Positions 22,071 to 23,093 of a stretch of DNA of 64,000 bases are shown here, in pieces; position 1 is the first letter of the stretch; every line of letters begins with the position of its first letter. This DNA is from Lepidodermella squamata (lineage: Eukaryota > Animalia > Gastrotricha): the NCBI GenBank assembly GCA_047495785.1, contig JBLDXI010000067.1, positions 90,662 through 154,661 of the forward strand. Direction: 5' to 3'. The position numbers and the translations under genes were made by a program. The notes beneath the pieces are model-generated. The model was not told the origin of the DNA and ran no database searches. It worked only from the letters and a program-made list of their open reading frames with translations.

Positions 22071-23093
22071 ACGTGTAATCTACACTTTGATCATGCCAAT
22101 CAGGCCGAGAAGCGTCCCGATAAGCAGCGTATAATGCAGCAAAGTGGCACAGGCCACGCATGTCTAAGTACACTCACTACGTGTAATCTACACTTTGATC
22201 ATGCCAATTAGGCCGAGAAGCGTCCCGATTAGCAGAAAAATAGAAGATGATTAGTAGCAGGCCGCACATGTCTAAGTACACTCTCAACATGTAATCTACA
22301 CTTTGATCATGCCAATTAGGCCGAGAAGCGTCCCGATTAGCAGAAAAATAGAAGATAATTAGTAGCAGGCCGCACATGTCTAAGTACACTCTCAACATGT
22401 AATCTACACTTTGATCATGCCAATCAGGCCGAGAAGCGTCCCGATACGCAGAAAACTAAACGGCATCAATCTTGAAGCATATCATTAACTTGATCACACA
22501 TCACGATGTTAATAAAATCAAAATTATCATGCGAGCGGAGCGAGCATGTGGTATGACCAAGTAAATTTACATTTTTACAGCGCTCATTAATAGATCGTAT
22601 TTGCATGCTCGCTCCGCTCGCATGCTAATGTTATTTATATTAACATCGTGTTTTCTGTGCTATCACTTTACGCCGGTTTTTCAATTAAACGATCACTACG
22701 CTGCGTATCGGGACGCTTCTCGGCCTGATTGGCATGATCAAAGTGTAGATTACATGTTGAGAGTGTACTTAGACATGTGCGGCCTGCTACTTTTTGTAGC
22801 TTAATACGCTGCGAATCGGGACGCTTCTCGGCCTGATTGGCATGATCAAAGTGTAGATTACATGTTGAGAGTGTACTTAGACATGTGCGGCCTGCTACTA
22901 ATTATATCCTATTTTTCTGCTAACCAGGACGCTTCTCGGCCTAATTGGCATGATCAAACTGTAGATTACACGATGAGTGGGTACTTAGACATGCGTGGCC
23001 TGCTTCTAATTATCTTCATTTTTTCTGCTAATCTGGACGCTTCTCGGCCTGATTGGCATGATCAAAGTGTAGATTACACGTGGTGAGTGTACT
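22071..23093. repeat. Palindromic array of 108-bp U2-like/anti-18S repeats (4 inverted + 4 direct)
   Basis: Left-arm units start at 22071, 22179, 22287, 22395; right-arm units at 22707, 22815, 22923, 23031; the arms are reverse complements. Confidence 0.92.

What the first reader, a model, noticed from the sequence alone, without database searches (positions are those of the whole stretch)
22071..23093. rDNA-inserted element carries an array of U2 snRNA 5'-end mimics
Seen: each 108-bp repeat contains CGCTTCTCGGCCT-RATTGGCAT-GATCAAAGTGTAG. Copies lie on + at 22714-22748, 22822, 22930 (one further substitution) and 23038, and on - at 22080-22114, 22188, 22296 and 22404. Known (from memory): invertebrate U2 begins ATCGCTTCTCGGCCT-TATGGCTAA-GATCAAAGTGTAGTATCTG. 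That gives two exact 13-nt blocks in register, and the stem-I GCC/GGC pairing is kept. Similarity stops inside the branch-point recognition sequence (GTAGTA becomes GTAGAT), and there is no Sm site, so these are not U2 genes. There are eight copies per element and sixteen in the dimer. Inference: captured U2 sequence was amplified in a transposon. It could yield U6-pairing decoys or anti-U2 small RNAs, or act as landing pads for U2-specific retroelements (Utopia and Keno insert in this part of U2).
Basis: partly seen in the sequence, partly recalled or inferred. Interest (0 to 1): 0.9.

Follow-up and report, generated by a model that had tools for sequence, protein, structure and literature searches.

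The report
U2-derived repeats in rDNA transposon
A non-coding mobile element lodged in one 28S rRNA gene carries inverted arrays of a 108-bp repeat whose core is a real, unusually well-conserved copy of the first ~38 bases of the host's U2 splicing RNA, joined to an antisense piece of 18S rRNA; these are not U2 genes, and their function is unproven.

Summary
Sixteen 35-nt blocks lie at the stated coordinates, where chance predicts none. Each matches the host's own U2 snRNA, nt 3-38, at 33 of 36 positions (alignment z about 17). They are not U2 genes: the Rfam U2 model gives 16 bits against a cut-off of 46, there is no Sm site or 3' half, and there is no snRNA-type promoter.

New here:
- The same unit also carries an antisense copy of host 18S nt 47-74.
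- The carrier is a 2345-bp non-coding element with no terminal inverted repeats and a 7-8-bp target duplication. It is present as an identical head-to-tail dimer in a conserved 28S loop.
- Three carrier subfamilies (A, B, C) occupy the same 28S spot. Three related relics (D, E, F) lie outside rDNA. The genome holds 145 blocks.
- Across these six lineages the two U2 halves stay 92-100% identical, while the rest of the unit is 20-50% identical (Fisher p 1e-6 to 5e-9). All lineages share a 1-nt deletion relative to U2, so there was one capture followed by constraint.
- Relatives C and D keep the full branch-point recognition sequence.

Decoy, small-RNA and landing-pad functions remain untested or unsupported, and no RNA data were reachable. 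First readers of this scan flagged the same arrays on other rDNA contigs of this genome.

The parts
21169..21176 (.). Left copy of the target-site duplication GGGAAGAG in 28S. The true duplication may be the 7-bp GGAAGAG.
   Evidence: BLAST of an intact unit: unit positions 4555-4562 are present on both sides of the insert. Junctions were read. Subfamily B has AGGAAGAG on the right.
21177..23521 (+). Element A, copy 1. It is 2345 bp, non-coding (longest ORF 74 aa), has no terminal inverted repeat, and has ATCACCGG-type subterminal motifs.
   Evidence: Nine 100%-identical copies lie on five rDNA contigs.
21332..21534 (+). Two direct copies of 'module X' (21332-21401 and 21470-21534). This is a ~65-nt segment about 83-90% identical to subfamily C and found nowhere else in the genome.
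21670..22026 (.). Array of 18.8 copies of a 19-bp palindromic repeat. Related arrays occur in subfamilies C and D.
22074..22455 (-). Left arm: 3.5 units of the 108-bp repeat, U2-sense on the minus strand. Blocks lie at 22080-22114, 22188-22222, 22296-22330 and 22404-22438.
22153..22181 (+). Best-preserved 18S-derived segment. On the + strand it reads like 18S nt 47-74, so it is antisense relative to the U2-sense strand of its unit. Weaker copies occur in most units, for example 22976-22999.
   Evidence: 26 of 27 identities plus a 2-nt indel. Score 21.5 against 8.4 +/- 1.3 in shuffles.
22521..22631 (.). Central hairpin between the two arms.
   Evidence: Sequence read. Hairpin-type alignment (a MIR862-like chance match to a long stem).
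22697..23094 (+). Right arm: 3.7 units of the 108-bp repeat, U2-sense on the plus (rRNA-sense) strand. Blocks lie at 22714-22748, 22822-22856, 22930-22964 and 23038-23072.
23188..23342 (.). Array of 19.5 copies of the 8-bp repeat AAAACTAG.
23522..23529 (.). Single GGGAAGAG shared between the two element copies.
23530..25874 (+). Element A, copy 2, identical to copy 1 (0 differences). It holds eight more blocks, from 24433 to 25425.
25875..25882 (.). Right copy of the target-site duplication. The 28S gene resumes here.

Best explanation
Each 108-bp unit is a chimera made of three parts: a short conserved leader ending in GGA, the first ~38-43 nt of the host U2 snRNA, and an antisense copy of 18S rRNA nt 47-74. 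It was formed once. The most likely route is RNA-mediated joining at the U2 site that U2-specific retroelements use (inferred). It was then amplified by tandem and inverted duplication.

The arrays now form the fold-back arms of a small group of non-coding, cut-and-paste-type elements. Three subfamilies of these elements sit in one conserved loop of 28S rRNA. In this window a single insertion has been doubled head-to-tail.

The blocks are not genes. They have no promoter, no Sm site and no U2 3' half. The two U2-derived half-sites (CGCTTCTCGGCC and GCATGATCAAAGTGTAG), together with the preceding GGA, are held almost invariant while everything around them drifts. They are therefore under selection at the level of the element.

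The mechanism I commit to is that the block is a cis-acting recognition sequence, reiterated in inverted orientation, that the element needs for its own propagation. The recogniser would be the unknown mobilising enzyme or a host factor, as with the repeat-built arms of Foldback, Galileo or Tetris-type transposons.

Shown: homology, chimeric make-up, architecture, site-specific carriers, differential conservation. Inferred: the RNA-mediated origin and the cis-acting role.
For: - Homology to host U2: 33 of 36 identities, z about 17. The 16 copies lie at the stated places, with 0 expected by chance.
- Antisense 18S nt 47-74: z about 10, and this is the only rDNA similarity in the whole element.
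- Carriers: subfamilies A, B and C all lie within a 13-bp stretch (unit 4555-4567) of the same 28S loop (Rfam LSU model about 1688-1695). A/B and C have different termini, and C is nearly palindromic.
- Not coding: no ORF over 74 aa.
- Conservation: block halves are 92-100% identical between lineages A-E, against 20-50% elsewhere. There are 0-2 differences in 29 block columns against 46-59 in 95 other columns, p 1e-6 to 5e-9. A sixth lineage, F, shares only GGA plus the block.
- One capture, no later conversion: every lineage shares a 1-nt deletion relative to U2 (GGCTATGATC becomes GGCATGATC or GGCTTGATC). No U2 variant gene with that state exists.
- RNA-type origin: lineage E starts exactly at U2 +1, and upstream sequence is unlike U2 promoters. 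The block ends at nt 38-43, while Utopia and Keno insert at 38/39 (PMC4640811). This genome has an intact APE+RT LINE in U2 with the structure U2(1-39)+U2(1-36)+LINE+U2(31-196).
- Blocks occur in inverted pairs in A, B, C, D and E.
- A second non-host module (X) is similarly conserved. This fits element-level cis functions.
Against: - No mobilising enzyme or autonomous partner was found, so no binder is known.
- The likelier transposase sites are the subterminal motifs (ATCACCGG in A/B, TATAAGG-type in C). These differ between subfamilies, whereas the arrays lie about 900 bp from the ends in A.
- The variable segment coincides with the loop of U2 stem-loop I, and the conserved parts coincide with U2's U6-pairing stretches. 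An RNA-level reading predicts this pattern more naturally.
- Arm orientation is divergent in A, B and E but convergent in C.
- Many copies are identical by descent through rDNA homogenisation. Independent lineages therefore number only about six, all from one genome.
- The body of the resident U2-LINE shows no similarity to the unit, so the proposed origin is circumstantial.
Confidence: 0.6

Rival explanations
1. Neutral relic. A U2/18S chimera was captured by chance and amplified with the element. It has no function, and its apparent conservation has a mutational or sampling cause.
For: Gene and RNA fragments are commonly captured by transposons. The antisense-18S part is clearly decaying (30-40% identity between families). 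Single units have no significant fold. There is no promoter. All data come from one genome, and many copies are identical by descent.
Against: The block has 0-2 changes in 29 columns, while the flanks in the same units have about 50-60% changes, in five pairwise family comparisons. Lineage F keeps only the block. Conversion from true U2 is excluded by the shared 1-nt deletion and the shared GGA junction. No variant U2 gene exists that could serve as a repeated donor.
Confidence: 0.2
2. RNA-level mimic. Pol I read-through of the interrupted 28S gene, or another transcript, yields RNAs carrying sense U2 5' ends (U6-pairing decoys) and antisense U2 and 18S stretches. Alternatively the 300-bp inverted arms fold into a hairpin that is diced into small RNAs.
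For: The right arm is U2-sense on the rRNA-sense strand. The conserved halves correspond to the U2 segments that pair with U6 (helix II and helix I, textbook knowledge), and the variable part is the stem-loop I loop. The arms are 92-93% complementary. Subfamilies C and D keep the branch-point recognition sequence.
Against: There are no RNA data of any kind. There is no snRNA promoter, Sm site or 3' box. Stem I is not maintained in C, and the branch-point sequence is lost in A, B and E. The shared deletion changes the GCU that pairs with the U6 AGC triad in most lineages. Arm-to-arm pairing would mask both sense and antisense blocks. Relics D, E and F lie outside rDNA. A benefit to a non-coding element is hard to specify.
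Confidence: 0.12
3. Landing pads. The blocks serve as target sites for U2-specific retroelements.
For: The blocks retain the sequence around the insertion point of the resident U2-LINE (U2 nt 29-39). Such LINEs are active-looking here. Utopia and Keno use nt 38/39 (PMC4640811).
Against: No LINE 3' junction was seen at a block: of six exact matches to the LINE tail, the one in U2-type sequence is in a true U2 gene. The arrays that were read keep regular 108-125-bp spacing. By contrast, at least six true U2 loci are interrupted. Subfamilies A and B have changed the 3' side of the site.
Confidence: 0.03
4. Degenerate U2 genes or a U2 pseudogene array that happens to lie in an inserted element.
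For: 5' identity to U2.
Against: Only nt 1-43 are present. The Rfam score is 16 bits against a cut-off of 46. There is no PSE or octamer such as real U2 genes carry at -38 and -75. The rest of the unit is antisense 18S plus unrelated sequence.
Confidence: 0.01

Closest known systems
SINEU elements of crocodilians (SINEs with U1/U2 snRNA-derived heads; PMC4494074)
   Same: A mobile, non-coding element carries the 5' end of U2 snRNA (32 bp in SINEU-3). snRNA-derived pieces are added repeatedly, and the additions are attributed to template switching by LINE reverse transcriptase.
   Different: SINEUs are poly(A)-tailed retroposons with the U2 piece at their own 5' end. Here the piece is internal, reiterated 6-8 times in inverted tandem arrays, fused to antisense 18S, and carried by DNA-type elements with 7-10-bp target duplications.
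[quoted passage not shown]
   Same: A DNA transposon with a fixed 28S site. It carries 2-5 repeats captured from the host (IGS and ITS2 pieces) that stay far more similar between diverged element families than the rest. Tandem insertions share one target copy.
   Different: Pokey has a TTAA target, terminal inverted repeats, a transposase gene and a different 28S site. Its repeats stay similar through continuing exchange with the IGS, which is excluded here by a shared derived deletion. Its captured sequence is not an snRNA.
Dada superfamily (PMC3706591, PMC8869645)
   Same: Site-specific insertion in multicopy RNA genes, no terminal inverted repeats, short target duplications, tandem copies separated by one duplication, and one-sided aberrant flanks (seen here in C62 and C104).
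   Different: No Dada transposase or any ORF is present. Known targets are U6, U1, tRNA and 5S genes, not 28S. The duplication is 7-8 bp (A/B) or 9-10 bp (C) rather than 6-7 bp. No target-mimicking subterminal repeat was found.
Foldback-type transposons with repeat-built arms (FB, Galileo, Tetris PMC4079207, Tm1 PMC3169594)
   Same: Long inverted arms composed of tandem repeats, non-coding copies, and variable repeat number between copies.
   Different: In subfamily A the arms are internal, about 900 bp from the ends, rather than terminal. The repeat unit derives from host snRNA and rRNA.
U2-specific retrotransposons Utopia and Keno (PMC4640811) and the resident APE+RT LINE in U2 genes
   Same: They split U2 at nt 29-39 and so create free-standing U2 5' fragments of the same extent as the block. 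The resident LINE carries an extra U2(1-39) head.
   Different: They are coding retroelements. Their bodies share no sequence with the 108-bp unit.

Membership tests
U2 spliceosomal RNA gene (Rfam RF00004) | Full-length match to the covariance model at or above the gathering score (46 bits) | tested here: not met
   16.3 and 14.9 bits, E 2.7-6, in the window. 16 bits in subfamily C. True host U2 genes score 150-161 bits.
U2 spliceosomal RNA gene (Rfam RF00004) | 5' end sequence including the U6-pairing and branch-point recognition regions | tested here: met
   33 of 36 identities to host U2 nt 3-38. The branch-point sequence is truncated in A, B and E and intact in C and D.
U2 spliceosomal RNA gene (Rfam RF00004) | snRNA-type promoter (PSE near -38, octamer near -75 in this host) | tested here: not met
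   A weight matrix was built from 28 host U2 upstream regions. The best element score is 9.6, against a real-site median of 15.4 and a shuffle maximum of 8.3 +/- 2.0.
Dada DNA transposons | Dada-type DDE transposase | tested here: not met
   No ORF over 74 aa in the element. No longer partner shares its termini. A distant autonomous partner cannot be excluded.
Dada DNA transposons | Insertion at one fixed site of a multicopy RNA gene, without terminal inverted repeats | tested here: met
   All 11 left junctions of A and B are identical. Subfamily C lies 3-5 bp downstream in the same loop. No inverted termini.
Dada DNA transposons | 6-7-bp target-site duplication | tested here: inconclusive
   7 or 8 bp in A and B, 9-10 bp in C.
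Foldback-type transposons | Long terminal inverted arms built of tandem repeats | tested here: inconclusive
   The arms are built of 108-125-bp repeats. In A and B they are internal. C is 86% self-complementary over 1.6 of 2.1 kb.
SINEU | snRNA-derived head at the element's 5' end, a poly(A) tail, and LINE-type target duplications | tested here: not met
   The blocks are internal and reiterated, and there is no poly(A).
Pokey / piggyBac | TTAA target and piggyBac inverted termini | tested here: not met
   The target is GGGAAGAG, with no inverted termini.

The most novel reading that the evidence does not exclude
The 40-nt module (GGA plus U2 nt 3-38) is a selected, working part of a family of non-coding mobile elements. 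These elements would exploit a spliceosomal snRNA sequence in one of two ways. The module could be a DNA site read by the same kind of machinery that recognises U2 genes. Alternatively it could be an rDNA-embedded RNA that pairs with U6 or U2. Either would be the first transposon cis-element derived from, and constrained like, the functional 5' end of U2.
Probability: 0.25. Interest if true: 0.75.

Novelty: new variant of a known kind. Interest (0 to 1): 0.5.

Why it matters
Transposons often pick up host fragments, and snRNA-headed SINEs are known. A captured snRNA piece that stays nearly invariant in six diverged non-coding lineages while its surroundings decay is unusual, and it points to a function that can be tested. 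The carriers also appear to be a second case, after Pokey, of DNA-type elements with a fixed 28S site, here in a conserved loop that no described element uses. Finally, the system links three kinds of multicopy-RNA-gene parasitism in one genome: U2-targeting LINEs, rDNA-targeting DNA elements, and chimeric snRNA/rRNA sequence. It is therefore a compact model for how such elements trade parts.

Tried and rejected
1. PSE-like promoter. I suspected one in the unit (CTTAGACATGTGCGG resembles host PSEs). The weight-matrix scan shows nothing above chance, and the segment is really antisense 18S.

2. 18S with an insertion. The idea was that the unit is a stretch of antisense 18S carrying a U2 insertion. 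The 45 nt upstream of the block show no 18S similarity (z -2.4 to +0.6).

3. Dada-like mimicry of the 28S target by the block. The score is below the shuffle means.

4. Unit body derived from the resident U2-LINE. No significant match.

5. Structured RNA unit. Fold z-scores run from -1.5 to +1.0.

6. Other Rfam families. Only sub-threshold miRNA-like hits to the palindromic repeats.

7. Autonomous partner.
- Whole-element searches with A and C, and a terminal 22-mer with up to 3 mismatches, found only the known copies.
- The one extra hit (C2:755740) has no other similarity and no nearby transposase.
- ORFs beside relics D and E are ordinary host genes.

8. Relatives elsewhere. Two pattern scans of metagenome contigs found nothing.

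9. Expression.
- No run on record as RNA holds the sequence.
- No search tool was sent those letters afterwards. The later Rfam call used 34166-34766, beside the equivalent stretch of another unit.
- One local script aligned the element against a whole rDNA unit, which contains an identical copy of that stretch. It was not sent to any database.

10. The first Rfam call on the whole window failed internally.

11. Organism. It was not named. An SSRP1 ORF has a 73% best hit that is unnamed, and its best named hits are spiralians at about 50-56%.

Full report
**Setting.** The window is a tandem rDNA array. The unit is 8440 bp and holds 18S, 5.8S and 28S on the + strand and a 5S gene on the - strand. 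BLAST of an intact unit against the window shows that the third unit is interrupted between 21176 and 25875, with unit positions 4555-4562 present on both sides. The insert is two copies of a 2345-bp element (21177-23521 and 23530-25874) with zero differences between them. A single GGGAAGAG separates them, and the same octamer flanks them. In an intact unit this octamer lies in a conserved hairpin loop of the large-subunit rRNA, at about positions 1688-1695 of the Rfam LSU model. The element has no ORF longer than 74 aa and no terminal inverted repeat. From left to right it holds:
- a subterminal region rich in ATCACCGG motifs;
- a 19-bp palindromic repeat array;
- a 108-bp array;
- a central hairpin;
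- the same 108-bp array in the opposite orientation;
- an 8-bp repeat array;
- a right subterminal region.

**The observation.** There are 16 in the window, where shuffles give none. The genome (121 Mb, 151 contigs) has at least 47 U2 genes scoring 150-161 bits. Read from those loci, host U2 begins ATCGCTTCTCGGCC and continues through GGCTATGATCAAAGTGTAGTATCTG. Against it, the block shows 33 identities in 36 columns. The differences are two mismatches in the stem-loop I loop and one missing base. The local alignment score is 55, against 15.3 +/- 2.3 for shuffled units. The Rfam U2 model sees only this 5' end: 16.3 and 14.9 bits, E 2.7-6, against a cut-off of 46.

**What else is in the unit.** Following a lead from another first-reader note (s1-430889), I aligned the rest of the unit to the rDNA.
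- Five to nine bases after the U2 part lies an antisense copy of host 18S nt 47-74. In the best unit it has 26 of 27 identities plus a 2-nt insertion.
- The score is 21.5 against 8.4 +/- 1.3 for shuffles.
- It is the only part of the 2345-bp element that resembles rDNA.
- Different units and subfamilies keep different ends of this segment, as expected for decay from one longer ancestor.

The unit is thus a chimera: leader, then U2 nt 1-43, then antisense 18S, then an AT-rich linker.

**Relatives in the same genome.** A genome search with the element found three subfamilies.
- Subfamily A is 100% identical, with nine copies on five rDNA contigs, mostly as the same dimer.
- Subfamily B is about 88-96% identical, with six copies.
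- Subfamily C is about 70-75% identical in the shared parts, with four copies.

All lie in 28S. A and B share the same junction; 11 identical left junctions were found. C lies 3-5 bp downstream in the same loop. It has a 9-10-bp duplication, unrelated termini and different subterminal motifs, and 86% self-complementarity over 1.6 kb. Two copies have one aberrant flank (C62 and C104). Three further relics lie outside rDNA: D (C13, three units), E (C15, an inverted pair) and F (C64, a single block). A pattern specific for the derived form of the block counts 145 copies genome-wide. No longer, coding partner shares the termini.

**Conservation.**
- In an alignment of 38 distinct units, the two U2-derived halves are 92-100% identical between lineages A, C, D and E.
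- The junction just upstream is 58-85% identical, and the loop 50-90%.
- The spacer, antisense-18S part, linker and far upstream region are 20-50% identical.
- Consensus comparisons give 0-2 differences in 29 block columns against 46-59 in 95 other columns (Fisher p 1.2e-6 to 4.6e-9).
- Lineage F shares nothing with the others except GGA plus the block.

Continuing conversion from true U2 genes would explain such a pattern, as continuing exchange with the IGS explains Pokey's repeats (PMC3849761). That explanation is excluded here. Every lineage carries the same 1-nt deletion relative to U2 and the same GGA in front of it. No U2 gene or variant in the genome has these states. The simplest reading is one capture followed by purifying selection on the block while the lineages were active.

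**What the blocks are not.**
- *Not genes.* Host U2 genes have an octamer (ATGCAAAT) near -75, a PSE (consensus near CCAGAACGCGGCGA) near -38, and an A/T-rich box. A weight matrix of the PSE finds nothing in the element above chance.
- *Not structured RNAs.* Single units do not fold better than shuffles. Stem-loop I pairing survives in A, D and E but hardly in C.
- *Not target mimics.* The block does not mimic the 28S target.
- *Not visibly used as landing pads.* The genome holds an intact APE+RT LINE (ORF1 715 aa, ORF2 925 aa) inside U2 genes, and other retroelement tails at U2 nt 28-36. Of six exact matches to that LINE's 3' tail, the one flanked by U2-type sequence is in a true U2 gene and none abuts a block, and the arrays that were read keep regular spacing.

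**Origin (inferred).**
- In lineage E the U2 part begins exactly at the U2 transcription start, and what precedes it is unlike any U2 upstream region.
- The U2 part ends at nt 38 (A, B, E, F) or nt 42-43 (C, D). Utopia and Keno insert between nt 38 and 39 (PMC4640811), and the resident LINE inserts at nt 31-36.
- One resident copy has the structure U2(1-39), U2(1-36), LINE, U2(31-196). This shows that free U2 5' ends are copied along with retroelement RNA in this genome.
- Crocodilian SINEU elements acquired U2 heads in a comparable way (PMC4494074).

These points favour an RNA-mediated junction as the source. However, the unit shares no sequence with the resident LINE, and the antisense orientation of the 18S piece is not explained.

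**How it most likely works.** The constraint acts on primary sequence of two half-sites separated by a variable 6-7-nt spacer, plus a non-U2 GGA. It acts in non-coding elements that always carry the blocks in inverted pairs, and next to a second conserved module with no host counterpart. I therefore favour a cis-acting recognition sequence reiterated in the fold-back arms, needed for propagation or maintenance of the element.

The main competitor is an RNA-level role. The right arm is U2-sense on the rRNA-sense strand, so Pol I read-through would produce both sense and antisense U2 5' ends and a long hairpin. The conserved stretches are also those that pair with U6. Against this reading:
- there is no promoter;
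- the branch-point sequence is lost in A, B and E;
- stem I is lost in C;
- the GCU that pairs with the U6 triad is altered;
- no RNA evidence of any kind could be obtained.

No run on record as RNA holds the sequence. I sent those letters to no search tool afterwards.

**Comparison and verdict.** The finding combines known themes in a new way:
- snRNA-derived parts in mobile elements (SINEU);
- host-derived repeats in an rDNA-specific DNA transposon (Pokey);
- TIR-less, RNA-gene-specific insertion with tandem copies (Dada, PMC3706591);
- repeat-built inverted arms (Foldback, Tetris).

It fails defining tests for membership in each of those families. The proposed functions remain open, and the landing-pad idea is disfavoured. 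First readers noted the same arrays on other rDNA contigs of this genome (for example s1-373942, s1-387731, s1-398042). An earlier follow-up (s1-374102) described the dimer and its Dada-like target. My results agree with it, and they add the subfamilies, the conservation test and the origin argument.

Noticed in passing
window 50110-51048: A second, unrelated 28S insertion of about 930 bp in another unit. It has an 8-bp duplication (CAAGGAGT) and 15-bp inverted termini beginning CAGACT. It looks like a hAT-type MITE at unit positions 3443-3451.
   Followed up: partly
window 16400/16401: The second rDNA unit lacks about 320 bp of spacer (unit positions 7914-8232) relative to its neighbours.
   Followed up: no
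L050 (G000:C15:3234500-3242499), about 1395-7078: An apparently intact APE+RT LINE (ORF1 715 aa without a Pfam match, ORF2 925 aa) sits inside a U2 gene at nt 31-36 and is preceded by an extra U2(1-39) head. The same 5' junction occurs at C51:185572 and C116:25475. A 21-bp remnant occurs at C42:728443.
   Followed up: partly
L077 (C19:1881800-1882250) and L079 (C2:1154950-1155400): U2 3' parts starting at nt 28 and nt 30 are preceded by AATAAA-containing tails of other, unidentified insertions. U2 nt 28-39 is therefore a multi-family insertion hot spot in this genome.
   Followed up: no
L001-L008 and L054-L073, 80 nt upstream of U2: Host U2 genes show a compact promoter: an octamer-like ATGCAAAT near -75, a PSE near -38, and an A/T-rich box near -20. 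There are at least three distinct upstream classes.
   Followed up: partly
window 21332-21401 and 21470-21534; L039 both arms: 'Module X', a ~65-nt segment, is about 83-90% conserved between subfamilies A and C but found nowhere else in the genome. It is a second constrained part of these elements, of unknown role.
   Followed up: partly
L043 (G000:C13:626500-627700): Relic D is a non-rDNA element with three U2-like units in alternating orientation, 19-mer-like palindromic repeats, and a 47/56-bp tandem array. It suggests the module belongs to a wider, not strictly rDNA-bound, element group.
   Followed up: partly
   Followed up: no
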